This document shows, in pieces, positions 10,052 through 58,076 of a stretch of DNA of 64,000 bases. Source of the DNA: Piromyces finnis finn (taxonomy: Eukaryota; Fungi; Neocallimastigomycota); contig MCFH01000022.1 of NCBI GenBank assembly GCA_002104945.1, positions 310,001-374,000 on the forward strand, written 5' to 3'. The stretch's first letter is position 1; each line of letters begins with the position of its first letter. A program made the translations under genes and the position numbers. Under the pieces are notes generated by a model that saw nothing but the letters and a program-made list of their open reading frames with translations, made no database searches and had not been told where the DNA came from.

Positions 10052-10217
10052 GAATTTTACTTAATTAAAATTTTAATTAATAATATTTTGATCGTATGAT
10101 CCATATTTATAATTAAATTTCCAAAAAAAAAAAAAAAAGTATATAAATATTGTATTTTGTTTTTTTTAAAAATTTTATTAATTTTAAATATCTAAGAAGA
10201 ATTATAAAAATATCAAT

Positions 10218-16800: not shown

Positions 16801-19116
16801 AATGAATCAAATAAAAATGTTGAAAACCTACCCTTACCCAATTCCTTCACTATTCTTTCTAACTATAAATGTATCAATAATTTGAATATTGAAGAACTTC
16901 AAGAAAATTTTAATGAGCATTTCACAGAAAACCAATTAGAAAATAATAACACTAAATTTAACTTTAGTATTAATGGAGAGAATGGACTTAAACTATTTAA
17001 AGAAATATTGAAAGGTATTAATCAAGGAGGCGCAGAAAAAATAAATAATCTTGACAAAACCAACTTTGTTACCTCGTTAGAATATAATAAGCAATTAAAA
17101 AAGATAGAAGCTCTAGAAAAGGAGAATAATCGATTGAACTATCAATTAGAGAAAAAAACATTGGAATACGATCATGAGCATATGGCAAAGGTTATGTTAG
17201 ACAAAGAATTAGAAGACTTGACATCACAACTTTTCCTACAGGCCAATAAATTAGTAGAAACAGAGTGTCATAAGTTGGAAGATACAAAAGTTAAATTAAA
17301 GGAACTTAATGATAAATATAACGCTGTTAAAATTCAATTAGAAAAGAGAGAAAATGAACTAAATGCCTTAAAGAAAGTAATGATTAAAAATGAAGAGAAA
17401 AAAATTTCTAAGCGAACAAAAATGTTCCCAAAGATTTTAAATAATAATGTTAATAGTTCCACTGTAGGAAATTCTATTATTCTTTTGAATAATCCACCAT
17501 TGGAAAAGCTCAATATTAACTCTGTGGCAAATTCTGAAGAATTATTATCAACTTCATATAATTCTAATAACAGTAAATTGTACAGTATGGACAATAATGT
17601 ATCTTATATTTCGACTGATTCATATAATGTTTTTGCAAGTAATATATTGTCTACTAATAAAGCCAATAGTGAAGCTGTTGTCAATGTTAATTCAGAAAGT
17701 AATAAAGTAACAAAAGAAATCAATAACTTAAATACTTTAAATCTAGATATCTGCTCTGAAACAATAATGGATAGTAATGGAAGAGATGAGGATGATAAGG
17801 TAATCCATGTTAATAATAATGCATCAATCGAAGAACAATCTGAAGAAATAAAATCATGGAACTTATATTCAACTAAAGTAATTGCCATTCAAAATGACAA
17901 AATCTTTACATACATTGATGGGGGTCAATTTAATGAATTTCAAAACTACATTCGCGATTCTCTTATTAAAGTTAATAATAATAAGAAAAAGAAAAATAAT
18001 ATATTTTGTCTTCCAAATACATCATTTATGAAGAGATGTATTGAAGATGAAATTTATCCATGTTTATTTGAACATTTCTCGGATCAACAATCTTCCAGTC
18101 AGAGTAAAAGAAATTCTATCACTAAAACACATGTTAATTTTAAAAAAAAGCTTCAAAAAGCATTGTCATGCAACGGTATTATTATTATTCCATTTGAGCT
18201 TTTATCAAAGAATGGTAAACTCATTAAATCTACTACACCAGTGACGCCGAAAGAAAAACAAAATTTAGATAACAGCACTTCATTTAGTAGCAGTGATGAA
18301 GAAAATGGTAAGGATAATGAAACTGTAAATGAATCTAACGATTCTTATTCCTCCAAGAAAATAGAATACTATTTAGAATATGATTTTGTTCATCCATTAC
18401 CCTTACCACCACGTAAAAAGTGTTGCCTTTGTATGAATTACCGAGATTGTCACTATCATATCATTTTTAAGAATATAGAGAGTAAAGATAAAGATGGTTC
18501 CTTGATTAGTCCTGATTCATCTAAATTAATAAATAATATTAATATCATTGTAAATAATAATAAATTATCGAATAATCAGGATAATTTAACATCCTCTGAA
18601 ACAAATAATAAACATACAAACAATGATAAAGATTCAACGATATCACCTACAACTAATTCCAATAGTCTTTCAAATCAAATGAATAAAAAGAATACTAATT
18701 CTAATAATGATGTATCCCCAGTGACATCACCTACATCAAAAGTAGTTGAAGATTACACGGCAAAATGTTACAATATAAACAGTGATTTTTTACATCAACT
18801 AAGAACAGAAAATTGTTTTTCTTTCAACGAACAATTTTTCCTTTGTCCTATCTGTCGTGATAAAATTGTAAGTGTTGCAGATTTATATAGCTATCTATCA
18901 AGTTTAGAATCTAAATTAACAGGTAGTAGTAAAGGACAATCAAGTATTTTAAATATGTTTAAGAATGTTATATTATTAAAAAGACGAATAGCAACAGCAA
19001 AACTTGGAGCATTGCAATTCTTTGAACAAAATAATGATTTATTTAAAGATGAATCATTGACAGCTCTATATGATAACAGTTCAGAAGAATGGGAAAATTA
19101 TGTTAAAATTATTTAA
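13882..19116 (+). CDS. SEC2: Sec2/Rabin8-like Rab guanine-nucleotide exchange factor; probable exons 13882-14089, 14441-15174, 15402-15938, 16054-19116
   Basis: Sec2p coiled coil KVMLDKELEDLTSQLFLQANKLV, then C-terminal FMKRCIEDEIYPCL, KKCCLC..CHY and LCPICRDKIVSVADLYSYL motifs. The upstream ORFs join in frame through GT..AG introns (phases 1,0,0). Linkage of exon 1 is least certain. Confidence 0.75.
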
Positions 19117-38679: not shown

Positions 38680-41600
38680 TTAATTTTTATATAAGTTTTC
38701 TATATCTTTAGTAGATTTTAAAACAATATTTGCTAATTGCATAATTTCATTTGTTTTTTGTTTCACCTAAAATGATTAATATTAAATATATGTTAATTTA
38801 TAATATTTTCTCAAACAAGCTTTTCAAATTTAATATAAAAAAGAAAAAATAAATTAAAAACTTACAATCATTTCCTTTGTTATTTCATCAATCTTAATAT
38901 TTACTGGTGGCCAAATATTTTTTATAGCTGTATGGAGTTGAGATGGAACCCATAATAAATAAGCATCTAAGAAAAATTTTGGTTGGGTTGACCATTTTTG
39001 TAATAACTTTTGTTTTGAATCAATATTTGAAGCTGCCAATACTCTAGTTAAATCTAATACTTTAGATTGAGTCTTAGCCCATGTCTTTGTCATAATTGAT
39101 GGTTTTGAATTAATAAATGGCTATATTAAAAATTATAAATTTAAAAAAAAATAATGTTATTATATTAGTATTAAGAATAATTAATATAAAAAAATAAATT
39201 TATATTTTATTCAAAAAAAAAAAAAATCTTTTTACCTCTAATAAACCAAAAAGACCTCTTTGAATAACTATTTTATGTATTGGATCATCATTCTTCTTAA
39301 CTGCTACTTTTCCACTATTTAAAGTTTGTTGATTAATAATTTTACCCTCTAAAAGGAAACGAGCAAACCATTGAATCTTAGAAGCAATTCCACTTATATT
39401 AACAGTTTGAGCTTCAGATGCAGATGGGAAATCTACTTCAATAGTTGAAAGTGGCCAGTTATGTGGACCATAATTTGGTGAAACAAAACATTTAATGGTA
39501 TCCTTTTCAGCATCATAATGAGGTTCCGGTTTTTCTAATATACGACCCCAACGACATAAACCACGAGTCATAAGTTTTCCAAGCCATTCATCTTTAATAA
39601 TAGTAATTCCTTTCATCCAGAATTTATCACCAGTTAAATTTTCGGAAGAACGTGTATGAATTAATTCCGATTGATCAGCTGATAAATGTTGTTCTTTACC
39701 AACCATTTCTTGATAGATAACCCAACGTGGAGTAGGATGCTTAGCATAAATACTACTATTACGATGAATACCAACGAATTGTTGATTGGAGGTATAGATA
39801 GTAGTATAACTTGGTTGAGGATTTTTAATATTCTTAGGATAACTATCGTTTATATAAGCGACTTGATCTGGGAAACCAGATAAAACAATTTGACAGATTA
39901 AATTAATTTGGTTTTCATTTGGTGGAGGCATACGTGGATTCATATAAAGACTATCTAATGTTTGACTTAATTGTTTACTAATAGATACGTTAGTATCATA
40001 AAATACTGTTTTAATTAAATTTGTTAATTGATGTCTTAATTTTGAAATTTCTAACATAGCTTTTAAACGAACAAATTTTTCTTTACAATATTCATTAAGT
40101 TTTTCTTCAGAAGGATTAGTAGAACGGAAATGTTCAAATGCACCAATACTTGTTAATAATTTTATGAAATCAGAAATAGGATTTTTACCATTGTAAGCTT
40201 GCATAACCTGGTAATACTTTTTACGTAATTCTCTACGTTGAGCTTTCATTTCATTTTCTACCTTATTCTTAAGTTCACCTTTACGGTCAAGAAGTTCATT
40301 TTCGTTTTTTATATCATCATCACTTTCACTATCACTATCATTTTCATCATCTGAATCTTCCTCATTATTATTTGATAAAAGTGTTTCATCACGCTCAAAT
40401 GGATCACCAACAGATAAACCTGCAACAATAGCAATAACATATGGAAGAATTGCATTTCCTTGTTGTGCAGCTAAAATTAACATTTTACCATATCTTGGAA
40501 GTACTGGTAACTTTGCAATTAATTTACCTAATGGAGTAATCTTTAAGTTCTTGGTATCAGGATCTAATGCACCTAAATAGGTTAAAATTCTTTCAGATTT
40601 TCTTAATTGGTCACGATTAGGAGCTGTTGGGAATGGGAAATTACATACTTGAGAAATACCCATTGATTTCATTTGAACTACCACACCATCAATTGGTGTT
40701 TTAAGAATTTCTGGTTTTGAGAAACCTTCAAATTGGTCATTAAAAACAGCACTACTAAACAAACGATAACAATGACCTGGACCTGTTCTACCTGCACGAC
40801 CAGCACGTTGATCAGCTGAAGCCTTAGAAGTCCAACGAATTTGATAAGTTTGAATACCAGTATATGGATCATAAACTCTAGTTTTTACTTTACCAGTATC
40901 AACAACATAACGAATATTTGGAATAGTTAATGAAGTTTCAGCAACATTAGTAGCAATAACACAAAGTCTTGAGTTTTCCGGTGGTTTTTCAAAAACTCTT
41001 AATTGAGCTGCAGTAGGCAATAATGAATATAATGGTAAAACATGTAATCCACCTACCGGAACTATTTTTTTCATAGAGATGAACAAAAAATAAAAAAAAA
41101 AGGAAAGAAAATATAAATAAACGAAATTTAATATTTGAACTATTTTTTTAAATTAAAATTAATAAAATATTTTCTGAAAAAAAAAAAAAAAATTACCATC
41201 ATCGTCATCTTCATCATCATCCATTACTTTATCAAATTCTTCATCTTCCTCATCATCAATATCACCATTTAATATAGTAATCTCTTCTTCTTCACTATCA
41301 CTAGCCTCTTCATCTTCATCTTCTATATCAGACATATCATCTAACATTTGGGTAGTTTTAGCCTTATCTTTGTTATCATTTTCTAATTCTACATTATCAT
41401 CTTCAGCACCAAATCCACCAGCACCTGTAGCTTTTTCTTTCTTTTGTAAATTATCAATATCATCTTCATTGTCTATTATATTTATTGTTATATTAATGTT
41501 AATATTATAATTATAAGGATTATTATTTATATAATTAAAAAATAAATTAATAAAATTACCACTTGATTCATCTGATGAATCCTTAGACTGATTATCTATC

Positions 41601-44227
41601 AACATAGCATCTTTATTACGATTAATTGGGAACTTCTTTCTTAACTTTTTACAAAGAATTTGAATTTCTTGTTGACCAGTTAAAAAGACAAGAATTCCAC
41701 CGGATGGTAACTTTTTATGAATTTTGCAAATCTTTTTGTAAACATCTGTAATATAATCATCAACTGGAGTACGTTTATTGTAGTGAACAACAACTTTATG
41801 TTGACGTCCATCAACTTTAATAACAGGAGGAACCTTTGTTGGAAATAGTGTCTTATTTTGTGTAAAATCGTCAACACGTAATGTAGCTGACATAATAATT
41901 AATTTAAGTGGTTTATTTAATTTTTTTGCTAGCATACTGTCCTTATCATTACGTAATTTAACAATTCTAGTCAACCAACCAATTAATACATCAGTACCAA
42001 CGGTACGTTCGTGAGCTTCATCAATAATAATAGCTGAATATTTAGTTAAAAGCAAATCTTCGACATTTTGGTTTTTAGCAGTATCCTTTGAAGCATTATT
42101 ATTAGATTTATCGGAAGAAGCTGCTAAACTAAGTTCTCTTAATAATATACCATCAGTCATAAACTTTATACGAGTGAAAGGTTTAACAGTACCAGAATCG
42201 TAACGAATTTGATAAGCAACTTCACCATTTGTTAAATTCATTTCCTCAGAAATACGTTTAGCCATACTTACAGCAGCCACACGACGAGGTTGAGTAATAC
42301 CAATCATACCTGTAAATTGAGGATGTTTTGGATTACCAAAACCAGCTTCATATAAAAATTGAGGAATTTGAGTAGTTTTACCGGAACCAGTTTCACCACA
42401 AAGAATAGTAACATCATTTTCCATAATAGTTTCCATGATTTGTTGTTCTTCAGCAGTAACTGGTAATTGTAATCTAGCTAATTGAATTTCATCTTTACGA
42501 TAAACAGGGTCATAGAATGCTGGTCTGTATGGCTTACTAGCTTCAAGAAGTTTTCTTTGTCTTTCTTTTTCCTCTTCCTCTTCTTTTTTCTTGCGTCTTT
42601 CTTCTAATACATATTCAGGGATCTTTGGTAAATTAGCTAAAACACAAGTCTTTACTAATCCATCTTCATTTAATTCTTCTCCATTTTCATCTCTATTAGT
42701 AGAATCAGATTCGGATTCAGAATTAGATTCAGAATCAGATTCAGACTCAGAAGTATTGTTTTCATTTTCGGATTCTGTTTTTTCATCTTTAATTTCATTT
42801 TCATTTTCATTTTCGCTATTTTCAGTATTATCTTCTTCTTCTTCCTTTGCTTTTTTCTCTAATTCTTCTTGTTTTTGTTTTTCTTTTAATAATCTCTTTT
42901 CTTCTTTCTTTTTCAATTTTCTTTGTCTCTTTTTTAATTTTCTTTCTGAAATTGGTTTATCTTCGTCATCATCAGAAGTCTTCCGTTTTTTCAATGCACT
43001 ACCAAATTCAATTGGTGTGAATGAAGTTTTTGAACTTTTACTACTTTTTAATGCACTACCAAAAGCTGGTATACTTTTAATAAATTTACTAGGTTTTTTA
43101 TTAAATGAAATTTCTTCTTTTGGTTTATCTTCTACATCATCTCCACGTCTTTCACCATACATACCATCATATTCAACAACTTCTACTTTAGATGCTTGAT
43201 TCTTATTATTTAAAGATGATTTGCTTTCATCATTATTATCACTATTATTATCATCTTCTGCACTATCATAATCATTAAATTCCTCAATCATATCATCATT
43301 ATATTCCGAAGGTTCTTTTCTGTCAACATATATATCAACACTATCTTCTAAATGTATTCCTGCACGTTGTTGATTTAATGCACTTAATAATTTTTCTTTT
43401 GATGTTTCTTTTCCTCTACCTAAATTCTTTGAAGATTGAAGAAGTGAAGTTTCTGAAAATGTTTCTTTTCTTTTAATTATAATTTTAAAGTTTTTAAAAA
43501 ATAATGATATTAATAATTTCATTAATTTTAAATTTTAGAATAAATATAAAATTGGTTAATATTGAATGGAATCTATTAATAATGATATTCATCATTGTAT
43601 TCTATATGCTCTTTTATTTATATATATTATTAAATATCAATTACACATGGTAAACTTACGATAATTTTTCAATCATTTTTACTCGATTTTCTTTTTTCAT
43701 TTGACGTTCCTTTGATATAAGAAAAAAAAAATTAATTAAATAAGCACAATAAAAATTATAAAATCTAATTGTAACATAAAATTTTAATTTTATACTTACA
43801 ACAAATTTTTCAAATCTCTTACGTTTTTTAGTTGACATTTTTAACTGAGCAGGGGACTACATTCAATTATTAAATTGAAATAAAAATAGTAATAATAATG
43901 AATAATAAAATTCATAATAAATAATTAATAATTATCAAATTAAATACATTCTATTTATATTATTATTTATTATACCTCGGTATATTGAACAATTTCCTGT
44001 TCTTCATTTTTCTTTTTAAGATTTTGTTGTTGGTTGGTATTATTCATATTATTTAAATCGATAATATCACCTTCAATAGCATCAATTATTGGTGCTGAAT
44101 TCTTTTTCTTTAAAGTTTTATCCTTTTTGCCATAACCATCTCTTGGTCTTGGATGAGCGATAGCATGTTTAGCATTTTGAGACGAGGCTCTTGCCTTTTG
44201 ATTAAACCTTGGTCTTCTTCTACCCAT
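38680..44227 (-). CDS. DHX37: DEAH-box RNA helicase Dhr1/Ecm16/DHX37 (U3 snoRNA release), multi-exon
   Basis: [13 protein letters not shown] start, [87 protein letters not shown], then HA2 and OB-fold regions. PLYSLL and FLYEAG are typical of the Dhr1 subfamily. Confidence 0.93.
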
Positions 44228-44451
44228 TTTATATTTATATGAATAATATTAAATAATTTAAAATATATATAATATAAAAAGGAAAAACAAAATTGGGAAA
44301 AAATAATTACAAAACAATAAAATATTATAAAAAAAAAACTAAGAATTGTTTGAAATTAATTCTATTTTTTAAAAATTTCAAACTAATTCCATATTAAAAA
44401 TAATTTTATTATTATTTAATTCATATATTCAAATATGAATAAATTATAATC

Positions 44452-44497
<46 letters not shown>

Positions 44498-44696
44498 GGA
44501 TAGATTAGTAACCAATTAAATCTAATTGAAATTTTAATATGTAATTTAAAGAAAAAGATTTTATAAATTTTAAATTTTCATTTTCTGTATATAAAAAGGT
44601 ATATTTTTAAAATAATATTTATATATTTATATTATCTCTTGAACCTTTATCATTTGTTTTATTCTGTTTTTTTTTTTTTTTTTTTTTGTAATATAC

Positions 44697-44734
<38 letters not shown>

Positions 44735-45393
44735 GATTCTTACTCAATAAAATTTTGTTTTCTTCCAATATTATTATTAATATTTCTATACTTTAAGTAT
44801 CTTTTTATAATAGTTTCAATTCTAACTTCTTAATCATTCTCTTTAATTATTATTAAAACTATTAATAATAATCATTATAATAAATTTATAATCACTAATT
44901 ATTCCATATAAAAAAAATACTAATCTATAATAAATTTTATTTAATCTATTATAATTCTATTATAAAGAAATAATAAAGTAATTCAATGTTATTAACAAAA
45001 TGTTAATAAGCATGTTTTTTAAATTTTTAACACACATTAAAATAGCACTATATTTATATTTTTTTAAAATTTATATTTTTTATTTTTAATAAATATTATT
45101 ATCATTTATATTTTTTTTATTTTTAATGAATGATAAATTATATATATATATATTTAAGGGGGATGGTTATATATACAATTTTTCATTTTTATCTTTGTAA
45201 ATTTTTTATCAAATTTGTTTATTATTCTTAACTTTTTTTCTAAATATTATTTGTTTATACTGATTTATTTTTTTTTTCTTTATTATTATTTAATTTTTTC
45301 TTTTATTTATTTATTTCATTTTTATGTGATTTTATTCTAAATCATAAATCACTCAGCTTCATTAAAAAAAACTTATATTTTATGAAAAAAAAT

Positions 45394-48300
45394 TTAGTTG
45401 CATGAAGTTGGAATACCACACCAGTATCCTTGGGAGTTAACACCCCAATCACCATCAGCATCACTAAGAACAATGTAGGAACAGGTTTCACAACATTCAT
45501 AACCTAATGGACGAGACCAACAAGTATCTTCAGCATCCTTAACAATACCACACCATTCTCCATTTTCGGCACCCCAGGCTCCACTTTCATCTGTAAGAAG
45601 AACCATGTAGTTACCAGCTGAACAACACTTGTAACCAAGAGCTTCGGCCCAACAACCAGATGGTTCAGTAGTACTGGTTGGTTCGGCAACAGCTGTGGTG
45701 GTGGTGGTTGGTTGGGCTGGTTCATCAAAGTCTGGGAATTCAAATGGTGGTTCATCAGCAAAGGATGGATTGGCGTTGACGGCTAATTCAACAATTTGCT
45801 TGTGGAACCATTGACCAGCTCTTGGTGAATCAGTAAGTGAGTCTTCACTAGCACAAACTGGATCATAACCAATAATGTTCTTGTTGTCACTACCATCAGA
45901 TTCACCTGGTGGCTTGAACCAGTAAACAGCATCAAGTCCTGGAAGATCTGCTGGATTGGCTTCTGGTCTTCTACCAATACCGGATCCCTTAATGTTACAC
46001 CAGTATTCTCCCTTGGTCTTAATGTTAGATACACCATTACGTGAAGTATCAACAACCCATCCAAAGTCAACCATACCAATCTTCTTTAATTCTTCTCTGA
46101 CATTCAAACTGTATTCGTATTCACTTTGACTTGGGTTACCGGCTAAAGTAACATCAAGAGTTTCTGGTCTAACTAATGGTTGAGTGTTGGAAATGTTAGA
46201 TGAGAAACCACGTAAAACTCCAGTACCAACCTTGTTTAAGAGTTGTTCAAGAATTGGAATAAGGAAACGCATGTTACCACTCCAACCTAACCATCCAACT
46301 TGTGCAAGATCCATGTAAACACCAACATTCTTCATGTTAAGCTTAGTAATGGCATAGACAAGAGCTTCCATTTGAGTATCGAATGCTTCTTCACAAACTG
46401 GATTATCATTGTGACTAACCATGTTACCCATGGCATCTGGTTCAACAATAGCAACAATTGGTCCTTCGTGAGCTGCAAAGTATCCTGCAATTTCATCAAT
46501 CCATTCCTTGTACTTACCAAGATGTTCAATACCTAATTCACCTCTGGAGGCTTGAGCAGAACAATCTCTGTTTGGTAAATTGTAGATAATGAAGGAAGTT
46601 AAAACCTTCTTACCGGTCTTCTTCATTTGTTCGGTAACTTGTGCTAAAACCTTTGGAACAAGCTTGACGGAATCAGTACTAGCTAACCAAGTTGGAGTTG
46701 GGTATCTAGCAACCTTAGCAACAATTTCGGCAACTTCATTTTCTCCTTCAGCAATTAACTTGTCGTATGAACTCTTGATTTGCTTTTGGTAGTCTGGGAA
46801 AACGTAGAATTCTTCAGCATCATCATAAATGTTGTGTGGATTACCAAAGATAGTTGGTTCTGGATAAGTGAAGGTAGTAGTGGTTTCTGGTGGTGCAGTC
46901 CATCTTGGTTGTTCAACACCACACCATTCTCCCTTTTCATTAATACCCCATTTACCACTTTCATCTTCATAAACAACTTCATTATCGAAACAACATTCGT
47001 AACCATCAGACTTGGCGAAACAGTATCTTTCTGGTGGTGGTGGAGTCTTGTTAAGGTTTTCAATTTCAGTGGTAAAGACAATATCATCGTGTGAGAAACC
47101 AACATGAACCTTGTATGTACCATCAATAGTTGTTTGCCATTCATTCTTGGTAGTGTTGAAGTATTGAGTATCAGCATAGGCTACAAGAAGGTTAACCTTT
47201 CTCTTTTCACCAGCTTCAAGATAAATCTTGGTGAAGTTCTTGAAGTTAAGTTCTGGGTAAACACCAATACGTGGATCAGCTTCAACAGTTGGCATGGTAA
47301 GATAAACTTCTGGTGTAATGTAACCACCAAAGTCACTAGTGTTTTCAATAGTGAAAGTAGTGGAAATACCGTTAATAAGGTTAAGAAGACGTTGAGTTTG
47401 AATGTTCCAGTAACTGAAAGCATCATCGTGAATCTTGAATTTAGCATAAGTAAGACCATGACCGAATGAGAAGTGTGGTTCAATCTTTTCCTTATCGAAC
47501 CACTTGTAACCAAGGTAGAAACCTTCACTGTATTCAATCTTTGGATAGACATCATTGTTACTAACAATATCACAACAGTAATCTTCGCGCTTCTTACCCC
47601 AAGTGAATGGTAATTTACCAGATGGTGAAACATCATGGAATAAAATATCAGCAAGACCATGACCAGCTTCCTTACCTGGCATACCAGCGTAAACTAAACC
47701 ATCAACATCGTCAATAAATGGTAAGTTAACAACACCTGGAGAATAGATAACAACAACAGTATTTGGATTGGCTGCAGCAACTGCGGCAACTAATTCATTA
47801 CCATTATGCCATAAATCAAGATTCTTTCTGTCACCACGATTACCTTCAACACTTAAATAGCCTTCACCAGAATTGGCAGTAACAACAACAATAGCAAGAT
47901 CAGCATCAGAAGCAACTTGAGCTGCCTTTTCAGTATCTTCATCATCTTCAGTAAAACTAGTAACTGTAATACCATCCTTTTCAGCACGTTCAGTAAGAGC
48001 TGAAAGTGGATCACTAATATCTTCCATATTAGTAGTACCTGAACCCCAACCTAAAGCAACAACACCAGACATCTTACCTTGAGTACAACCATTATCGGTA
48101 CATAACTTGGTTGGAAGAGCACCGTCACCAATAATAGCAATCTTACCGTATTTCTTACCAGATATTGGTAAAATATCCTTATCGTTCTTTAAAAGAACAA
48201 CAGAAGCAGCAGCAGCCTTACGAACAAGTTCAGTGTGACCTTCAGTACCATCAGCATCAAGATTGATTTCTGGGAAATCATCCATTTGTCTGTACTTATA

Positions 48301-49698
48301 TAACATAGTTAATACACGTTCACAAGCTTCATCAAGATAAGAAATATCAATTTCTTCGCTTTCAATAGCAGCCTTGAGTTCTTCTCCCCAGTAACTATCT
48401 TGAACACTTTCTCCCCATTCAGTACCACCTGGCATGTTAAGATCTAAACCATTTTTAATTTCATACTTATCCTTAGTACCCCACCAGTCACTAGTGACAA
48501 AACCGTGGAATTTAAATTGCTTCTTTAAAACTTGGTTTAAAAGATAAGTGTTATTTGCAGATGGAATACCATTAAGATCATTATAAGCTGACATAAAAGC
48601 ACCAGCACCAGAAACAACAGCAGCCTTAAATGGTGGGAAGTAAACTTCTTGTAAAACACGTTCATCAATAACTGAATTTGAGTTTTCACGTCTGGTTTCT
48701 TGTTCATTACCAACAAAGTGCTTAGCAGTAGCAAGAACACCTTGACTTTGAATACCAGCAACAACATTCTTTGAAGCAACAGTAGCAAGGAAAGTATCTT
48801 CACCATAACCTTCCCAGTTTCTACCAGCAGCTGGAGAACGGTACATATTCTAATTTACAATAAATACATTTTTATAAAAATTATTAACAAATAATAAATA
48901 TATATTAATATAAAAAGTAATATATTATTTAATATTATATCAACGCATTAGAATATTAGTTATTATTGTTATACACACCATAGCTGGACCTAAAAGAACA
49001 TTGACACCCTTAGCTCTGCATTCTTCACCAAGAGCAACACCCTATTATAACAAAATAATGAAGCATATGTAAATATTCCATTATAAATTATACATTTTTA
49101 AATTATTTATGTTTCGTCTCCTTTCTGGTATACTAACAATATCTTTCATAAGATTTTGATCAAAAGTAGCAGCAACATTTAAACCAGATGGGAAAGTGGT
49201 TGAATGCTTAGCGGAACGAACACCAGCTGGACCATCTTGTAAGCATACACCCTTAAAACCTAATCTTTCGATTGGAGGAATGTAACCAACACATGGACCA
49301 AAACTATTACCAGTACCTTTTTTATTTTTATTTTCATTATTATTATTATTATTATTATTATATTTTAAATTTTAATATAAATTATGCAAAAAAAATAATA
49401 ATAATTGCTTTAATTTTTGTAATTTCTATAATTTTTTTTTTAAGTTATTACTTCAATTTATTTTTCAAATAGTTTAAATTATAAAAATTTATAATTGTCA
49501 CTAATTCTTTTTTTTTAAAAAAAAAAAAATTATATAATTACCAGTAACCATATTGATCTTTTCATCTAAAGTCATTTCTTCAACGAAGGCTTTGGCTAAA
49601 TCTTCTGATTCAGACCATAAACGAGTTTTAATTTGGAAAGCATTAACCATAGGTGCTGCAATAGCACATACGGCTAATAATTTTTGATATAATCTCAT
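45394..49698 (-). CDS. Secreted cellulosomal GH3 beta-glucosidase - dockerin - GH6 cellobiohydrolase - dockerin - dockerin fusion, copy A (4 exons; last exon ~45394-48849)
   Basis: Signal peptide MRLYQKLLAVCAIAAPMVNA. GH3 motifs CLQDGP, GPAMNMYRSPAAGRNWEG, KHFVGNEQE, FVTSDWW (nucleophile) and NSGEGY (acid/base), plus an Fn3-like tail. Internal dockerin CFAKSDGYECC..WG..GEWCG. GH6 motifs IYNLPNRDC, IVEPDAMGN, GWLGW, YWCN and WFKPPGESDG. Two C-terminal dockerins; Pro/Thr linkers. Confidence 0.93.
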
Positions 49699-49819
49699 TT
49701 TATTTTATTTTTTTAAAACTTAAATAATCCTTTTTTTTTTCTCTCTTTATTCTAAATTTTTAATTTTACTTCATATATATTTTTATTTATTTATTTTATT
49801 CTTAAAATTTATTCTTTAA

Positions 49820-49893
49820 ATAATCCGGTTATTTATTTTATTGATAAAAAATAAGTATAACTACCAGAGTTATCCTATTAAAAAATTATTTTT
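49820..49893 (-). promoter_or_regulatory. Upstream block conserved between the two GH3-GH6 genes (copy A), containing palindrome ATAACT-N5-AGTTAT
   Basis: AAAATAAGTATAACTACCAGAGTTATCCTATTAAAAAATTATTTTT (49848-49893) matches 55708-55753 except at one base. The palindrome is at 49857-49873, ~160 bp upstream of ATG. Confidence 0.55.
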
Positions 49894-51404
49894 CTAATAA
49901 AATATAAAAAAATAAGATTTTAAGAATTTATTATGAAATATAAAAAGAATAATAAATTCCTTTAATTTTTTTGTAATTCTAAGGAATAAATATCTTTTTT
50001 ATGAAAATTGTAATATAAAAATTAAATTAAGTTCAATAATGGAACTGATCTACAAATATAAATTAAAAAATGAAGATCCTTAAATTTTATATATATTAGC
50101 GTTTTGTGTAACATTAATTATTCTAAAAAAATTGAAAATATATTAAATATTTTTTATTAAAATAAAATATAAACCTTAATATATATAAAACTGTAGTTTT
50201 TTTAATTAATTATATGTAGAAACAATTGACTAGAAATTAATATATAATTTAAAAATAAGAAAAGTTCTCTATTTTTTAATACTATGAAAAAAATAGTGTA
50301 CAAAAGGAAAATATGTTAAAAAAAAAGTATATATTAATAATATTATTAAAATCGATTAGTTTATCTTTAATAGAAATTTATTAAACAAAACAAAAAAATG
50401 AAAAAATTATATAAAGAATTATTTTCAAACCTATTACTATAGTTATTATTATTTTGGGGAAACAATTTTTAATTACTATGATTTTTCATTAATGATAAAA
50501 TTATTATAATAATAATAAATAATAATCAACAATTTGACTATTTTTTTTTTTTTTTTTTTACATTATATCACAATATTTCTATACTTTAAATCTTCATTAA
50601 TTAATAATTAAATAATTATACTTTAAAATAATTTTTATTAAAATTAATTGATTATAATAACACAAAACAACAATATTTAACATTTTTATCATATTTTATT
50701 TGAAAATAAATTAAATTTTTAATTTCAATAAATTAATCTTTTCTGAAAAATATTTAAAAGTTTATGTTAAACAGTATATATATTGACTAGAAAAAAAAAA
50801 AAAAAAAAAAAAAAAAAACAGAAAATAGTATATTTATATATTGTGTTAATCTTTTTTTGAAAAAAACACATTTTTTGTTTTATTTATTTTACATACTAAC
50901 AGTTATTAATTAATAACCAAATTTTTATATTTATAAAAAAATATATCATTTTACATTTATTATTTCCTAATTATTTATAACATCAGTAAATAAAAACAAT
51001 TTTATAATCTTTTTTATTAAATTTATAAACATTTTGTTTCTTCTTTCTAAATAAATAAAATAAACTATATGCATTATATTATAAATTAAACACTTACAGT
51101 AATATTGACAATCACTAAAAACTTTAAATATTTAATTAATTTTTTTTTATTCTTTATTAAAAATATATTATAATATATTATTTTTCTTTCTACATCTTTT
51201 AAAACTTTTTTTTTTCTTTTAGCTTTTATATTTTATTTTTTTATTTTAAAATTATATTTTTTTAATTTATACTTTTACTCTTTTAAATTTAATGTTTTTA
51301 TATTTTCATATTCTAAATTTTTTTTTCTTTCCAATTTCATATATATTTCTATTTTTGTATGTATATATAATTTATAAAATAAAAATATTTTTATATAAAC
51401 TTAT

Positions 51405-54400
51405 TTAGTTGCATGAAGTTGGAATACCACACCAGTATCCTTGGGAGTTAACACCCCAATCACCATCAGCATCACTAAGAACAATGTAGGAACAGGTTTC
51501 ACAACATTCATAACCTAATGGACGAGACCAACAAGTATCTTCAGCATCCTTAACAATACCACACCATTCTCCATTTTCGGCACCCCAGGCTCCACTTTCA
51601 TCTGTAAGAAGAACCATGTAGTTACCAGCTGAACAACACTTGTAACCAAGAGCTTCGGCCCAACAACCAGATGGTTCAGTAGTACTGGTTGGTTCGGCAA
51701 CAGCTGTGGTGGTGGTGGTTGGTTGGGCTGGTTCATCAAAGTCTGGGAATTCAAATGGTGGTTCATCAGCAAAGGATGGATTGGCGTTGACGGCTAATTC
51801 AACAATTTGCTTGTGGAACCATTGACCAGCTCTTGGTGAATCAGTAAGTGAGTCTTCACTAGCACAAACTGGATCATAACCAATAATGTTCTTGTTGTCA
51901 CTACCATCAGATTCACCTGGTGGCTTGAACCAGTAAACAGCATCAAGTCCTGGAAGATCTGCTGGATTGGCTTCTGGTCTTCTACCAATACCGGATCCCT
52001 TAATGTTACACCAGTATTCTCCCTTGGTCTTAATGTTAGATACACCATTACGTGAAGTATCAACAACCCATCCAAAGTCAACCATACCAATCTTCTTTAA
52101 TTCTTCTCTGACATTCAAACTGTATTCGTATTCACTTTGACTTGGGTTACCGGCTAAAGTAACATCAAGAGTTTCTGGTCTAACTAATGGTTGAGTGTTG
52201 GAAATGTTAGATGAGAAACCACGTAAAACTCCAGTACCAACCTTGTTTAAGAGTTGTTCAAGAATTGGAATAAGGAAACGCATGTTACCACTCCAACCTA
52301 ACCATCCAACTTGTGCAAGATCCATGTAAACACCAACATTCTTCATGTTAAGCTTAGTAATGGCATAGACAAGAGCTTCCATTTGAGTATCGAATGCTTC
52401 TTCACAAACTGGATTATCATTGTGACTAACCATGTTACCCATGGCATCTGGTTCAACAATAGCAACAATTGGTCCTTCGTGAGCTGCAAAGTATCCTGCA
52501 ATTTCATCAATCCATTCCTTGTACTTACCAAGATGTTCAATACCTAATTCACCTCTGGAGGCTTGAGCAGAACAATCTCTGTTTGGTAAATTGTAGATAA
52601 TGAAGGAAGTTAAAACCTTCTTACCGGTCTTCTTCATTTGTTCGGTAACTTGTGCTAAAACCTTTGGAACAAGCTTGACGGAATCAGTACTAGCTAACCA
52701 AGTTGGAGTTGGGTATCTAGCAACCTTAGCAACAATTTCGGCAACTTCATTTTCTCCTTCAGCAATTAACTTGTCGTATGAACTCTTGATTTGCTTTTGG
52801 TAGTCTGGGAAAACGTAGAATTCTTCAGCATCATCATAAATGTTGTGTGGATTACCAAAGATAGTTGGTTCTGGATAAGTGAAGGTAGTAGTGGTTTCTG
52901 GTGGTGCAGTCCATCTTGGTTGTTCAACACCACACCATTCTCCCTTTTCATTAATACCCCATTTACCACTTTCATCTTCATAAACAACTTCATTATCGAA
53001 ACAACATTCGTAACCATCAGACTTGGCGAAACAGTATCTTTCTGGTGGTGGTGGAGTCTTGTTAAGGTTTTCAATTTCAGTGGTAAAGACAATATCATCG
53101 TGTGAGAAACCAACATGAACCTTGTATGTACCATCAATAGTTGTTTGCCATTCATTCTTGGTAGTGTTGAAGTATTGAGTATCAGCATAGGCTACAAGAA
53201 GGTTAACCTTTCTCTTTTCACCAGCTTCAAGATAAATCTTGGTGAAGTTCTTGAAGTTAAGTTCTGGGTAAACACCAATACGTGGATCAGCTTCAACAGT
53301 TGGCATGGTAAGATAAACTTCTGGTGTAATGTAACCACCAAAGTCACTAGTGTTTTCAATAGTGAAAGTAGTGGAAATACCGTTAATAAGGTTAAGAAGA
53401 CGTTGAGTTTGAATGTTCCAGTAACTGAAAGCATCATCGTGAATCTTGAATTTAGCATAAGTAAGACCGTGACCGAATGAGAAGTGTGGTTCAATCTTTT
53501 CCTTATCGAACCACTTGTAACCAAGGTAGAAACCTTCAGTGTATGGAACATCAATAATTTTATCATTACCGTAGACAACATCACAACAGTAATCTTCGCG
53601 CTTCTTACCCCAAGTGAATGGTAATTTACCAGATGGTGAAACATCATGGAATAAAATATCAGCAAGACCATGACCAGCTTCCTTACCTGGCATACCAGCG
53701 TAAACTAAACCATCAACATCGTCAATAAATGGTAAGTTAACAACACCTGGAGAATAGATAACAACAACAGTATTTGGATTGGCTGCAGCAACTGCGGCAA
53801 CTAATTCATTACCATTATGCCATAAATCAAGATTCTTTCTGTCACCACTGTTACCTTCAACAGTTAAATAACCTTCACCAGAATTGGCAGTAACAACAAC
53901 AATAGCAAGATCAGCATCAGAAGCAACTTGAGCTGCCTTTTCAGTATCTTCATCATCATCAGTAAAACTAGTAACTGTAATACCATCCTTTTCAGCACGT
54001 TCAGTAAGAGCTGAAAGTGGATCACTAATATCTTCCATATTAGTAGTACCTGAACCCCAACCTAAAGCAACAACACCAGACATCTTACCTTGAGTACAAC
54101 CATTATCAGTACATAACTTGGTTGGAAGAGCACCGTCACCAATAATAGCAATCTTACCGTATTTCTTACCAGAAATTGGTAAAATATCCTTATCGTTCTT
54201 TAAAAGAACAACAGAAGCAGCAGCAGCTTCACGAACAAGTTCAGTGTGACCTTCAGTACCATCAGCATCAAGATTAAGTTCTGGGAAATCATCCATTTGC
54301 TTGTATTTGTACATCATAGTTAAAATACGTTCACAAGCTTCATCAAGATAAGAAATATCAATTTCTTCGCTTTCAATAGCAGCCTTGAGTTCTTCTCCCC

Positions 54401-55565
54401 AGTAACTTTCTTTTTCAGTTGGACCCCATTGCTTACCACCTGGCATATTAACATCTAAACCATTAGTAATTTCATACTTATCCTTAGTACCCCACCAGTC
54501 ACTAGTGACAAAACCGTGGAATTTAAATTGCTTCTTTAAAACTTGGTTTAAAAGATAAGTGTTGTTAGCAGATGGAATACCATTAAGATCATTATAAGCT
54601 GACATAAAAGCACCAGCACCAGAAACAACAGCAGCCTTAAATGGTGGGAAGTAAACTTCTTGTAAAACACGTTCATCAATAATAGAGTTAGAAGATTCAC
54701 GCTTGTATTCTTGTTCATTACCAGCAAAGTGCTTAGCAGTAGCAAAAACACCTTGACTTTGAATACCAGCAACAACATTCTTTGAAGCAACAGTAGCGAG
54801 GAAAGTATCTTCACCATAACCTTCCCAGTTTCTACCAGCAGCTGGAGAACGGTACATGTTCTATTTCACAATATTTTAAAAAATACATTACAATTTAAAA
54901 TTTTTAATTATTTGTTATTAATTAATAAAATAAATTTAATGATTATATTATTAAATTTTACAAAAAAAAATTCCTACCATAGCTGGACCTAAAATAACGT
55001 TAACACCCTTAGCTCTGCATTCTTCACCAAGAGCAACACCCTATTAAATATTAAAATATAATTAATTTAATAATATTTTAAAAAAATTACTTTTTAAAAT
55101 ACATTTTACTAACAAGTTTCTTCATAAGATTTTGATCAAAAGTAGAAGCAATATTTAAACCAGATGGGAAAGTGGTTGAATGTTTAGCAGAACGAACACC
55201 AGCTGGACCATCTTGTAAACATAAACCTTTGAAACCTAATCTTTCAATTGGAGGAATGTAACCAACACATGGACCAAAACTATTTTCAGAACCTTTTATT
55301 TCATATAATAACAAAAAACAATTATTTTTAATATTCTTCTATTTTAACAAATTTTTTAATTTTAATATACGGAAAGTATGGGAAGAAGTAAAAAAATTTT
55401 AATCATACCAGTAACCATGTTAATCTTTTCATCTAAAGTCATTTCTTCAACAAAAGCTTTAGCTAAATCTTCTGATTCAGACCATAAACGGGTTTTAATT
55501 TCAAAAGCATTAACCATAGGTGCTACAAAAGCACATACGGCTATTAATTTTTGATATAATCTCAT
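51405..55565 (-). CDS. Secreted cellulosomal GH3 - dockerin - GH6 - dockerin - dockerin fusion, copy B (4 exons; last exon ~51405-54860)
   Basis: Same architecture, intron positions and catalytic motifs as copy A. Signal peptide MRLYQKLIAVCAFVAPMVNA. Differs from copy A only in the GH3 part. Confidence 0.93.
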
Positions 55566-55669
55566 ATTTTTATTTTATTGAATACTATTAAATTATTATT
55601 TTTTGTTTTTATTTTAATTAAATGCTTCTTTTTTTTTTATTTATTTTTTCTTAAAATTTATTATCCAAA

Positions 55670-55753
55670 TAATCCTGTTATTTATTTATATTTTTTTTAT
55701 CTTGAGTAAAATAAGTATAACTTCCAGAGTTATCCTATTAAAAAATTATTTTT
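55670..55753 (-). promoter_or_regulatory. Upstream block conserved between the two GH3-GH6 genes (copy B), containing palindrome ATAACT-N5-AGTTAT
   Basis: ATAACTTCCAGAGTTAT at 55717-55733, ~150 bp upstream of ATG 55565, inside a 46-bp block nearly identical to 49848-49893. Confidence 0.55.
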
Positions 55754-58076
55754 TTAATAAAATTTTTTTTATAAAAAAAAACTTATTTTATTCAATAAAA
55801 ATCAAATAGTAAATTTTAAGAATTTATTATAAAAATAAAATAATAATAAATATCTTATTTTTAAAAATTGAAATTTTAAGGGAAATTAGACCTTTTATAT
55901 TCAATAAAAAATTTTTTAATATAAAATATTAGTTAGTATAATAATAAATTAGGTTTTGTGAAACTTTTGATATATTCATGCTCAAATATATAAAAATATA
56001 AAATAGTGTTAAAATATAAATCTTTAATATTATTATTAATAAAAACGGTGTAATTAATAATTCTATAAATTAAAAATTTATATTATCAAAAAAAAGGATT
56101 CATTTTTTAAACCATTTGTTAACTATGGAGGTTTTAAACTTTAATTATTATATAAACTTTTATATCAAAAAAAAAGAAAAATTACCCAATAAAATATAAA
56201 AAATAAATGAATAGTTTAATTTATAATTTAATATAATGAGTAATATTTTACAGTCATTATGAATAACAATACTTTATTGGTAAAAATCTTGTTTTATTAA
56301 ATAAAAACAATACGAAAAAATAATACTTTAAAATAATAAAATTCTTCCCTTTTTCTATTAATATAGCTTTTTTTAATTTTTTAATTTACTAATACAATAT
56401 AACTTTATCTAATATACTTCTTTGCATACTCTATATTTATAAGTGTAAAATATATTAATAATATATTGAAATTAATTTTTATATATTTTATCTATAAATT
56501 TAAATTAATTTAAAATAAACAAATATATATCATTAGTAATACAAAAACAAACTTTATTTTATATAAAAAAAGGTAATACCTATGAATATATTAAGCTTGT
56601 AATATATTATTAATTTATATATATATTTATATTATAATTTTCAACCCAAGGATCTCAATAAAATATCTCATCATGATAACAATATTTCTTATAAATATAT
56701 TATAATCTAATGAAAAGGATAAACATAATAAAATTTTATTTTATAATAAACATCATTATAGGTAAAAAAAAAAAAACATTTAAAAAAGTATATTTAAATA
56801 TATTATATAATTAGTACTAAAAATTATACAAAATAAAAAAAAAGAAAAATAAATGATTAAGTAATATAGAAATATCTAAAATAACTTTTTTGTATATATT
56901 TCATTTTAATATATTATTGTTTTGTTTTAATATTATTATTGAATGTATACAAAATTATAATTATTACATATATAGTTTAATATATATTAATATATGAAGG
57001 AAAGAAATTGAAAGAAAATTTATACAACTAGCATAGATGGTTTTATTGAAAAAGAAACTTTTCCAGTACATATATCAATTATATCAATTATTGAAATAAA
57101 ATGGAAAATTCTGATTTATTGGTTACCACAAAAGTAGCTTTATACAATTATAACAGCCTATCTAAAATTATTAAAAAATGATAGGTAATAAAATGAATCA
57201 TAAATTAAAAAAATGTTTTCAATAGAAATTTAGGGATTTATTAAGAATTATAATTGTTGTTTTTTTCTAATAATATTCTTATGGAATAAATTCTCCACAT
57301 TCAAATCATTAATTTTTTTTAAAAAAAAAAATATAAATTATAAATATTGATTAATAATGATTTCTTTATAATATGTTTTTATTATGCCTATATTGTTTTG
57401 TAATGAAAGTAAAATTTACAATAATAATAAAATTAAATAAATAAAACTTAATCTTTTATTATAAATATTTCATCTGATTCTAAAAATGATTTATTTAAAT
57501 ATATTGTTCCTTTAATTGTTTTCCTATAGTTTCAATAATAAAATTAATTGTTTAAAGTTGATAGTAGATATAATGTTTCTTTTTTTATATAAATAAATAT
57601 AATATCTTTCCTATTATTTTAAATAATATATTTTATGATTTTTATAGCATTAAGCAATATAAAAATCTAAAAGCATGGAGTTATATAAATGATCATTAAT
57701 ATAAAAAAGATTATATGAAAATACATAATATTATTATTCAGGGATATTAATCTAAAAATAGTAAGATAAAATTAAAATTTAAATAATAATAAAGGATTAA
57801 TTTTTATTAAATTTTCCACTCTGAATTATTTTTAAAATTTAAAAAAAGTTTTTTATGCTTCACTAACAATAATAAATAATTCAATTGTATATTAAAGAAT
57901 AAATAGTAATATAACATTCTTTTTAAAATCATTACTTCTACTACGTTTTAAATAAATAATAAATCTCAATTATAATGCTGTTCTTGTAGCTTTAAAACTT
58001 TATACAAATAAGAATAAATTACTATGTGTATAATAACTATTTAAAAGAAAAATATAGATGATATCATTAAATATAT

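What the first reader, a model, noticed from the sequence alone, without database searches (positions are those of the whole stretch)
45394..49698. Bifunctional cellulosomal enzyme: beta-glucosidase (GH3) fused to cellobiohydrolase (GH6) with three dockerins
Seen: one secreted polypeptide, signal-GH3-Fn3-dockerin-linker-GH6-linker-dockerin-dockerin, with both catalytic sets intact (GH3 SDW and SGEG; GH6 RDC, EPD and ESDG). Known: GH6 enzymes release cellobiose and are product-inhibited by it, GH3 converts cellobiose to glucose, and both families occur separately as dockerin proteins in gut-fungal cellulosomes. Inference: a single-chain cellulose-to-glucose module that relieves product inhibition by proximity, useful as a natural template for enzyme engineering. 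I cannot determine whether this fusion has already been characterised.
Basis: partly seen in the sequence, partly recalled or inferred. Interest (0 to 1): 0.8.

Follow-up and report, generated by a model that had tools for sequence, protein, structure and literature searches.

The report
Natural beta-glucosidase–cellobiohydrolase fusion enzyme, already catalogued
This gut-fungus gene really does encode one secreted protein joining a cellobiose-splitting enzyme to a cellulose-chopping enzyme with three anchoring modules, but the same architecture, and this very gene, is already listed in published tables, though nobody seems to have tested how it works.

Summary
Window 45394-49698 (minus strand) is a four-exon gene of Piromyces finnis, ORX49994.1 / Pirfi3|327415, 1284 aa. 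It encodes signal peptide, GH3, Fn3-like, CBM10 dockerin, 24-aa linker, GH6, linker and two dockerins.

- **One reading frame:** everything from mid-GH3 to the stop lies in a single uninterrupted exon.
- **Catalytic residues:** all are present and invariant in 14 orthologues.
- **Selection:** both halves are under purifying selection (dN/dS 0.12 and 0.08).
- **Expression:** a spliced 3.65-kb transcript contig spans both halves. It comes from the tandem twin gene at 51405-55565.
- **Distribution:** the fusion occurs in Piromyces, Neocallimastix, Anaeromyces and Pecoramyces.

It is not new. Berlemont 2017 lists "GH3-CBM10-GH6-2(CBM10)". The supplement of Hagen et al. 2021 lists "GH3-DOC2-GH6-DOC2-DOC2" for this gene and its twin, detected in a rumen metaproteome. 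A 2026 preprint mentions the same architecture.

I found no biochemical characterisation. Relief of product inhibition by proximity therefore stays a reasonable, untested inference, and cleavage into two enzymes is not excluded.

Points that may be new are the fixed-length, highly conserved dockerin-linker bridge, and the lack of any stand-alone orthologue of either half. Interest is modest.

The parts
49542..49698 (-). Exon 1: start codon, signal-peptide-like N-terminus (residues 1-20) and start of GH3
   Evidence: Translates to P0001 residues 1-52 exactly. GT donor at 49541.
49317..49541 (-). Intron 1 (225 nt, GT..AG, 8% GC)
   Evidence: Skipped by the X1 transcript contig.
49138..49316 (-). 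Exon 2 (GH3 N-terminal domain)
   Evidence: Translates to P0001 residues 54-112. The split codon 53 is G|GT = Gly.
49042..49137 (-). Intron 2 (96 nt, GTTAGT..TAG)
   Evidence: Joint 49041->49145 in the X1 and X5 contigs; the 7 letters in between are the twin gene's version of the exon 2 end.
48979..49041 (-). Exon 3 (21 codons of GH3)
   Evidence: Translates to P0001 residues 113-133.
48850..48978 (-). Intron 3 (129 nt, GTGTGT..TAG)
   Evidence: Joint 48849->48979 'skips 129' in the X1 contig.
45394..48849 (-). Exon 4: rest of GH3, Fn3-like, dockerin 1, linker, GH6, linker, dockerins 2 and 3, stop
   Evidence: One ORF. Pfam hits. Translates to P0001 residues 134-1284.
48487..48489 (-). GH3 catalytic nucleophile Asp254 (SDW)
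   Evidence: Aligns with the TDW Asp of T. reesei Cel3A (4I8D/3ZYZ, E 3e-138). Invariant in 14 orthologues. Codon checked.
47863..47865 (-). GH3 acid/base Glu462 (SGEG)
   Evidence: Aligns with the SGEG Glu of Cel3A. Invariant. Codon checked.
47092..47259 (-). Fn3-like domain core (residues 664-719) closing the GH3 module (GH3 ends near residue 728, base 47065)
   Evidence: Pfam PF14310, 38 bits. The Cel3A alignment runs to residue 728.
46915..47025 (-). Internal fungal dockerin 1 (CBM10, residues 742-778)
   Evidence: Pfam CBM_10. Matches the P. equi Cel45A dockerin 1E8P/2J4M, E 1e-10. Most conserved region of the protein, 85% mean pairwise identity.
46843..46914 (-). Linker 2 (24 aa, residues 779-802) between dockerin 1 and GH6
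   Evidence: Fixed at 24 residues in 11 orthologues, 81% mean identity. dN/dS 0.11.
45754..46842 (-). GH6 catalytic domain (residues 803-1165) with Tyr889, Asp895 (RDC), Asp938 (EPD) and Asp1118 (ESDG)
   Evidence: Pfam PF01341, 255 bits. Best solved relatives are cellobiohydrolases 3A64, 3VOG and 5XCY, E about 1e-60. Residues invariant. Codons checked.
45658..45753 (-). Linker 3 (Thr/Pro/Glu-rich, residues 1166-1197)
   Evidence: Variable: 32-66 aa and 39% identity among orthologues.
45409..45657 (-). C-terminal double dockerin (CBM10 2 and 3, residues 1198-1280)
   Evidence: Pfam CBM_10. Aligns over its whole length with the double dockerin 2J4M, E 4e-15.
51405..55565 (-). Tandem twin gene (copy B, ORX49995.1 / Pirfi3|327427), same architecture
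   Evidence: 100% identical to copy A over 45394-47457. There are 74 nt / 33 aa differences in exon 4, all in GH3.

Best explanation
This is a real, expressed Piromyces finnis gene for a secreted cellulosomal enzyme of about 139 kDa with two active heads. The N-terminal GH3 is a Cel3A-type beta-glucosidase. The C-terminal GH6 is a tunnel-type, non-reducing-end cellobiohydrolase. A 37-aa fungal dockerin and a fixed 24-aa linker join them, and a double dockerin follows. Shown: the single reading frame, the splicing, one mRNA across both halves, conservation of all catalytic residues, purifying selection on both halves, and presence in at least four genera. Inferred: the dockerins place the protein on the scaffoldin; the GH6 releases cellobiose from cellulose chain ends; the tethered GH3 hydrolyses that cellobiose to glucose within nanometres. 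This would keep the GH3:GH6 ratio at 1:1 and lower the local concentration of the GH6 inhibitor.
For: One ORF holds GH3_C, Fn3-like, CBM10, GH6 and 2 CBM10. The exon-by-exon match to the 1284-aa public protein is exact. A 3651-nt contig in run X1 has all three introns removed and runs from exon 1 to the last dockerin; metatranscriptome contig 46680-47070 in X5 bridges Fn3-like, dockerin 1 and the start of GH6 at 100% identity. The GH3 half matches T. reesei Cel3A at E 3e-138 over residues 28-728, with nucleophile and acid/base aligned. The GH6 half matches fungal cellobiohydrolases at E 1e-60, including the C-terminal tunnel loop, whereas the alignment to endoglucanase 1DYS stops before that loop. 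D254, E462, Y889, D895, D938 and D1118 are invariant in 11-14 orthologues at 72-96% identity. dN/dS against Piromyces sp. E2 is 0.119 for GH3 and 0.079 for GH6. Protein groups containing Pirfi3|327415/327427 and Neosp1|699432 were detected in a cow-rumen metaproteome. A Neocallimastix proteome also contains such a chain. In an engineered analogue, a CelS-beta-glucosidase fusion raised saccharification more than twofold.
Against: There is no enzyme assay of any member. No evidence shows that the secreted chain stays intact. The metaproteome detections were in single animals and cannot show a junction-spanning chain. Over the diverged GH3 part the spliced contig carries the twin gene's letters (34 of 40 listed variants), so copy-A-specific mRNA is not shown. 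Stand-alone dockerin-bearing GH3 and GH6 enzymes also exist in these fungi, so the cellulosome already provides proximity and the added benefit of covalent fusion is unknown. AlphaFold gave no confident inter-domain geometry: pTM 0.64, with dockerin 1 and linker 2 at pLDDT 30-40.
Confidence: 0.75

Rival explanations
1. It is a polyprotein precursor. The chain is made as one and then cut in the conserved bridge, giving GH3-dockerin (about 84 kDa) and GH6-dockerin-dockerin (about 55 kDa). These dock independently. Fusion would then serve co-expression and 1:1 stoichiometry, not tethering.
For: Each half would keep its own dockerin(s) after a cut in linker 2. Linker 2 is unusually conserved for a linker (81% identity, fixed 24 aa, invariant Q-P-R), as a recognition site would be. 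Old cDNA entries of the GH6-dockerin-dockerin part alone exist.
Against: Linker 2 has no dibasic Kex2-type site; the KR/RR sites lie inside the domains. The stand-alone cDNA entries begin inside the linker or inside the GH6 fold without a signal peptide, so they look like 5'-truncated clones, not products. There is no proteomic evidence either way.
Confidence: 0.18
2. It is an intact bifunctional chain, but without kinetic coupling. The fusion persists for reasons such as dockerin economy, co-regulation or folding, and gives no advantage over the two enzymes docked separately.
For: Gut-fungal cellulosomes already carry separate GH3-DOC and DOC-GH6 proteins. Cellobiose diffuses much faster than the enzymes turn over (general knowledge). 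AlphaFold shows no fixed orientation of the two active sites.
Against: The fusion has been kept with nearly invariant length across genera, and no stand-alone orthologue of either half was found. This argues that the linkage itself is under selection. The engineered exoglucanase-BGL fusion did help.
Confidence: 0.25
3. It is an assembly or annotation artefact: two neighbouring genes wrongly merged.
For: In Piromyces sp. E2 the same locus is annotated as separate 'GH3, partial' and 'GH6' genes.
Against: The E2 split is caused by runs of N. Beside the gap, one frame reads from Fn3-like through the dockerin and linker into GH6. In P. finnis the junction lies inside one exon with no stop. Transcript contigs and eight independent protein clusters carry the fusion.
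Confidence: 0.01

Closest known systems
Published orthologues with the same architecture: Orpsp1_1|1176522 (Pecoramyces/Orpinomyces C1A), Neosp1|699432, Anasp1|291096, and Pirfi3|327415/327427 themselves
   Same: Identical domain order: 'GH3-CBM10-GH6-2(CBM10)' in Berlemont 2017, Table 1 (PMC5428031), and 'GH3-DOC2-GH6-DOC2-DOC2' in Hagen et al. 2021, Table S2 and Data S2 (PMC8026616). Identity is 77-80%.
   Different: Nothing structural differs; this is the same protein family, and for Pirfi3|327415 the same gene. None has been characterised biochemically in the papers I could search.
Trichoderma reesei Cel3A beta-glucosidase (PDB 3ZYZ, 4I8D)
   Same: The three-domain GH3 fold (barrel, alpha/beta sandwich, Fn3-like) aligns end to end, E 3e-138, with the nucleophile and acid/base conserved.
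   Different: Cel3A is a free single-head enzyme. Here the Fn3-like domain runs on into a dockerin and a GH6. This lineage has a vicinal Cys pair (C558-C559) and a variable loop at 561-574.
Fungal GH6 cellobiohydrolases (Coprinopsis Cel6C/Cel6A 3A64/3VOG, Phanerochaete Cel6A 5XCY, T. reesei Cel6A 1QK2)
   Same: The catalytic Tyr/Asp set and both active-site loops are present, including the C-terminal loop with its Cys pair. E is 1e-54 to 1e-60.
   Different: There is no CBM1. A two-residue deletion lies in the N-terminal loop. It is attached C-terminally to a GH3-dockerin.
Canonical gut-fungal cellulosomal GH6 (DOC2-DOC2-GH6, Cel6A/CelA type)
   Same: Same family, same organisms, dockerin-borne.
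   Different: Identity is only 31-35%, and it forms a separate clade on a long stem in the GH6 tree. Its dockerins are N-terminal rather than C-terminal.
Engineered exoglucanase-beta-glucosidase fusions, e.g. C. thermocellum CelS-CaBglA (PMC5429504)
   Same: A cellobiose-producing cellulosomal exoglucanase is covalently joined to a beta-glucosidase to relieve cellobiose inhibition; saccharification rose more than twofold.
   Different: It is artificial and bacterial, with GH48 + GH1 rather than GH6 + GH3, and has no internal dockerin.
Piromyces equi Cel45A fungal dockerins (PDB 1E8P, 2J4M)
   Same: All three CBM10 modules match. The C-terminal pair aligns with the double dockerin over its full length.
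   Different: Dockerin 1 is single, internal, and has Phe instead of Trp after the first Cys in every orthologue.

Membership tests
Glycoside hydrolase family 3 (Cel3A-type beta-glucosidase) | GH3 N-terminal barrel, C-terminal alpha/beta sandwich and Fn3-like domains | tested here: met
   Pfam PF00933 130 bits, PF01915 176 bits, PF14310 38 bits, all above cut-off. End-to-end alignment with 3ZYZ/4I8D.
Glycoside hydrolase family 3 (Cel3A-type beta-glucosidase) | Catalytic nucleophile Asp and acid/base Glu | tested here: met
   D254 in SDW and E462 in SGEG align with the corresponding Cel3A residues. Both are invariant in orthologues.
Glycoside hydrolase family 3 (Cel3A-type beta-glucosidase) | Hydrolysis of cellobiose to glucose | not testable with these tools
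   Needs an enzyme assay. The top dozen solved relatives are beta-glucosidases.
Glycoside hydrolase family 6, cellobiohydrolase type | GH6 fold with the catalytic Asp acid (EPD), the pKa-modulating Asp (RDC), Tyr, and the candidate base Asp (ESDG) | tested here: met
   Pfam PF01341 255 bits. Y889, D895, D938 and D1118 are present and invariant. The roles assigned to these residues come from my knowledge of T. reesei Cel6A.
Glycoside hydrolase family 6, cellobiohydrolase type | Both tunnel-forming loops present (exo type) rather than deleted (endo type) | tested here: met
   Gap-free alignment of the C-terminal loop with cellobiohydrolases 3A64/3VOG. The alignment to endoglucanases 1DYS and 1TML ends at about residue 1120, before that loop. 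The N-terminal loop is present with a 2-residue deletion. Modelled at pLDDT 84-95.
Glycoside hydrolase family 6, cellobiohydrolase type | Processive release of cellobiose from non-reducing ends | not testable with these tools
   Needs an assay on PASC/Avicel with product analysis.
Fungal (non-catalytic) dockerin, CBM10 | Module of about 40 aa with the conserved Cys pattern and Gly-Tyr / Trp-Cys-Gly motifs | tested here: met
   Pfam CBM_10, three stretches, 102 bits. PDB 1E8P/2J4M matches for all three. At least 4 Cys in each.
Fungal (non-catalytic) dockerin, CBM10 | Binding to scaffoldin (ScaA) cohesin repeats | not testable with these tools
   Needs binding assays. Whether the internal dockerin binds at all is open.
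Gut-fungal cellulosome component | Secreted (signal peptide) and found in the cellulosome fraction | tested here: inconclusive
   The N-terminus is hydrophobic and ends in VNA|F, judged by eye with no predictor available. The protein was detected in a rumen metaproteome on switchgrass fibre in one animal.

The most novel reading that the evidence does not exclude
GH3, dockerin 1, the 24-aa linker and GH6 form an obligate, co-evolved unit rather than two modules on a loose tether. Residues 21-1170 keep nearly the same length (1149-1153 aa) in every genus. The internal dockerin (85% identity) and linker 2 (81%, fixed length, dN/dS 0.11) are as conserved as the catalytic domains, while the C-terminal linker and dockerins drift. 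Neither half has a stand-alone orthologue: the nearest complete GH3 is 46% identical, and the nearest GH6 is 41%, with 31-35% to the ordinary gut-fungal GH6. The internal 'dockerin' may therefore act as a structural bridge that sets the geometry of the two active sites, or as a conserved processing signal. No paper I found describes such a role.
Probability: 0.25. Interest if true: 0.5.

Novelty: already known. Interest (0 to 1): 0.3.

Why it matters
A natural, evolutionarily stable fusion of a cellobiohydrolase with the beta-glucosidase that removes its inhibitor is a ready-made template for one-chain cellulose-to-glucose catalysts. It is also a clean system for asking whether covalent proximity adds anything beyond co-docking on a scaffoldin. 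The gene and its architecture are already in public databases and in published tables. What remains to be done is the biochemistry, not the discovery. The conserved dockerin-linker bridge is the one feature that might repay a specialist's attention.

Tried and rejected
- **NpaBGS:** I asked whether this characterised N. patriciarum GH3 is the GH3 half of an orthologue. It is not. Its cDNA starts MKFSSVLST and encodes a 776-aa stand-alone enzyme.
- **AlphaFold, fusion orthologues only (14 rows):** mean pLDDT 45, pTM 0.34, unusable.
- **AlphaFold, block alignment of 150 rows:** both catalytic domains fold well (mean pLDDT 82.8). Dockerin 1 and linker 2 stay at pLDDT 30-40 and pTM is 0.64. This gives no information on inter-domain geometry and no support for a rigid unit.
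- **Literature strings:** 'GH3-GH6' and its variants found nothing relevant. The gene number with 'Piromyces' found nothing in main texts; it was found only in a supplement.
- **Haitjema 2017 cellulosome proteome:** not held.
- **P. rhizinflata cellobiohydrolase:** no relevant paper turned up.
- **Origin of runs SRR25404263-66:** I could not confirm it from the tortoise-fungus paper.
- **Gene neighbourhood:** no CAZyme cluster beyond the tandem pair. Neighbours are a DEAH helicase, a cyclin-domain protein, a Sec2p-like protein and a nitroreductase.
- **GH6 tree:** it has no aerobic-fungal sequences, so I make no claim about root or donor.
Full report
**What is there.** The window comes from Piromyces finnis. 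The protein encoded at 45394-49698 (minus strand) is 100% identical to ORX49994.1 (BCR36DRAFT_327415, 1284 aa, annotated 'hypothetical protein'; UniProt calls it 'Probable beta-glucosidase G').

A straight translation of the finding's coordinates reads through three AT-rich stretches with stops. These are GT..AG introns of 225, 96 and 129 nt. The exons are 49698-49542, 49316-49138, 49041-48979 and 48849-45394.

I translated each exon on its own and found each as an exact substring of the public protein: residues 1-52, 54-112, 113-133 and 134-1284. The split codon 53 reads G|GT.

The key point is that exon 4 alone is one 1150-codon ORF. It carries the second half of GH3_N, then GH3_C, Fn3-like, CBM10, GH6 and two more CBM10. 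The fusion therefore owes nothing to gene modelling.

**Expression.** In run X1 a 3651-nt contig lies on 45523-48849, 48979-49041, 49145-49307 and 49540-49623. All three introns are removed, so it is cDNA of one mRNA running from exon 1 to the last dockerin.

Its differences from the window fall only at 47458 and beyond. Of the 40 listed, 34 equal the letters of the tandem twin gene. So the assembled transcript is copy B's. The two copies are identical over 45394-47457, which includes the GH3-GH6 junction, so the junction evidence applies to both copies. Copy-A-specific mRNA is not shown.

A true metatranscriptome run (X5) has 100%-identical contigs over 45434-47070. One of them, 46680-47070, bridges Fn3-like, dockerin 1 and the start of GH6.

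**Are both heads intact?**
- **GH3 half:** residues 28-728 align end to end with T. reesei Cel3A (3ZYZ/4I8D, E 3e-138). D254 (SDW) lies on the nucleophile and E462 (SGEG) on the acid/base.
- **GH6 half:** residues 803-1165 match fungal cellobiohydrolases best (3A64, 3VOG, 5XCY, 1QK2; E 1e-54 to 1e-60). Y889, D895 (RDC), D938 (EPD) and D1118 (ESDG) are in place.
- **Exo or endo type:** the C-terminal tunnel loop aligns without gaps to the cellobiohydrolases. Alignments to endoglucanases 1DYS and 1TML stop before it.
- **Conservation:** all these residues are invariant in 11-14 full-length orthologues of 72-96% identity.
- **Selection:** against Piromyces sp. E2, dN/dS is 0.119 for GH3 and 0.079 for GH6. 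Neither half is decaying.
- **Dockerins:** all three CBM10 modules match the P. equi Cel45A dockerin structures.
- **Mass:** the mature chain is 139.4 kDa before glycosylation.

**Distribution.** Eight 90%-identity clusters carry the whole architecture. Named members come from Neocallimastix californiae, N. lanati, N. 'constans', Anaeromyces robustus and Pecoramyces ruminantium. There are also many metatranscriptome contigs of about 4 kb with a single intron-less ORF.

Piromyces sp. E2 seems to lack the fusion, with separate 'GH3, partial' and 'GH6' models. The split is an artefact of N gaps. Next to the gap, one frame runs from Fn3-like through the dockerin and linker into GH6.

Two older entries are at least 90% identical to the C-terminal part of a fusion protein: P. 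rhizinflata 'exocellobiohydrolase precursor' AAD02028.1 and N. patriciarum AEX92713.1. They begin inside the GH6 fold or the linker and have no signal peptide, so they look like 5'-truncated clones of fusion transcripts.

**Is it known?** Yes.
- Berlemont 2017 (PMC5428031), Table 1, lists 'GH3-CBM10-GH6-2(CBM10)' for Orpsp1_1|1176522 among multi-activity enzymes. It was the only such protein in 218 fungal genomes.
- Hagen et al. 2021 (PMC8026616), Table S2 and Data S2, list 'GH3-DOC2-GH6-DOC2-DOC2' for Neosp1|699432 and for the protein group Orpsp1_1|1176522; Pirfi3|327427; Pirfi3|327415; Anasp1|291096. Each was detected in a cow-rumen metaproteome, in single animals.
- None of these discusses mechanism. 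I found no assay of any member, within a library that lacks most subscription journals.

**How it probably works.** The shown facts fit an intact two-headed cellulosomal enzyme. The rest is inferred:
- The double dockerin, and perhaps the internal one, fix the protein to the scaffoldin.
- GH6 threads a chain end and releases cellobiose.
- The tethered GH3 converts that cellobiose to glucose.
- This holds a 1:1 ratio of the two activities and lowers the local level of the inhibitor.

The engineering precedent is a CelS-beta-glucosidase fusion in C. thermocellum, which more than doubled saccharification (PMC5429504).

Two rivals remain open:
- **Cleavage in the bridge.** Each product would keep its own dockerin(s). 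Linker 2 is suspiciously conserved, although it has no dibasic site.
- **An intact chain with no kinetic gain.** Separate GH3-dockerin and dockerin-GH6 proteins already share the scaffold.

**What may be new.** Among 11 orthologues, mean pairwise identity by region is:

| Region | Identity | Length |
|---|---|---|
| GH3 | 0.80 | |
| Dockerin 1 | 0.85 | |
| Linker 2 | 0.81 | always 24 aa |
| GH6 | 0.82 | |
| Linker 3 | 0.39 | 32-66 aa |
| Dockerin 2 | 0.65 | |
| Dockerin 3 | 0.53 | |

The bridge is thus as constrained as the catalytic cores.

Neither half has a stand-alone orthologue. The nearest complete GH3 is 46% identical. The nearest GH6 relatives are sequences of about 41% identity, from metagenomes and bacterial MAGs. 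The ordinary gut-fungal dockerin-GH6 enzymes are only 31-35% identical and form a separate clade.

AlphaFold with a 150-row block alignment folds both domains well. It leaves dockerin 1 and linker 2 at pLDDT 30-40 with pTM 0.64, so it neither supports nor refutes a fixed geometry.

**Verdict.** The feature is already catalogued but uncharacterised, so interest is modest.

Noticed in passing
window 45394-47457 versus 51405-53468; copy B gene 51405-55565: The tandem twin genes are 100% identical over the 3' 2064 nt (end of GH3, bridge, GH6, dockerins). They then differ at 74 nt / 33 aa of exon 4, all in GH3; dN/dS between the copies there is 0.43. This pattern indicates gene conversion confined to the 3' part.
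   Followed up: partly
L001 (Piromyces sp. E2, KZ150789.1) 1-10389, compared with window 39200-55565: Piromyces sp. E2 has the same two tandem genes beside the same DEAH helicase. At the 45 residues where P. finnis copies A and B differ, the helicase-proximal E2 copy is A-like (25 against 4) and the distal copy is B-like (29 against 11). So the duplication predates the species split. All other genera are B-like, which makes copy A a derived paralogue with altered GH3 loops (residues 276-284 and 561-574). In E2 the two GH6 halves are an 87%-identical mosaic; in P. finnis both copies carry the A-type GH6.
   Followed up: partly
L001 1362-2207 and 8125-8378: Runs of N in the Piromyces sp. E2 assembly split each fusion gene into a 'GH3, partial' and a 'GH6' model (OUM67453/OUM67451 and OUM67450). 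This hides the fusion in that genome's annotation.
   Followed up: yes
P0159 (AAD02028.1) and P0160 (AEX92713.1), compared with P0004 residues 780-1302: The P. rhizinflata 'exocellobiohydrolase precursor' and an N. patriciarum W5 'putative cellulase' are 91% and 99% identical to the C-terminal part of a GH3-GH6 fusion protein. They start inside the GH6 fold or the linker, without a signal peptide, so they are probably 5'-truncated cDNAs of the fusion.
   Followed up: partly
window 45754-46842 (GH6 domain): The fused GH6 belongs to a lineage separate from the ordinary gut-fungal dockerin-GH6 enzymes. Identity is 31-35% and the clades are separate, each with SH-aLRT 100. Its nearest non-fusion relatives, at about 41%, are sequences from metagenomes and bacterial MAGs (Deltaproteobacteria, Polyangiaceae). 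No aerobic-fungal sequences were in the tree, so its origin stays open.
   Followed up: partly
window 49523-49903 versus 55390-55763: About 380 bp spanning exon 1 and the upstream region are 83% identical between the two copies, while the rest of the 1.7-kb AT-rich spacer is not alignable. This may be a shared promoter or 5' UTR.
   Followed up: no
window about 47580-47440 (residues 557-604): An invariant vicinal cysteine pair (C558-C559, in D-Y-C-C-D) sits in a GH3 segment that T. reesei Cel3A lacks at that position. It lies next to the loop that differs most between copies A and B. AlphaFold confidence there is below 50.
   Followed up: no
L003, L004, L005 (Logan contigs of SRR25404263, SRR25404265 and SRR25404266): The two deepest-branching fusion proteins (P0007, and P0008 which has a fourth dockerin) come from intron-less contigs of 4.1-4.2 kb in these runs. 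The organism is not established. The tortoise gut-fungus RNA-seq project is an unverified lead.
   Followed up: partly
window 39200-43522 (-), 427-5472 (-), 16192-19116 (+), 10218-10985 (+): The neighbours are housekeeping-type genes: a DEAH-box helicase in two ORF pieces, a cyclin-domain protein, a Sec2p/Rabin8-like GEF and a nitroreductase. There is no wider CAZyme cluster.
   Followed up: partly
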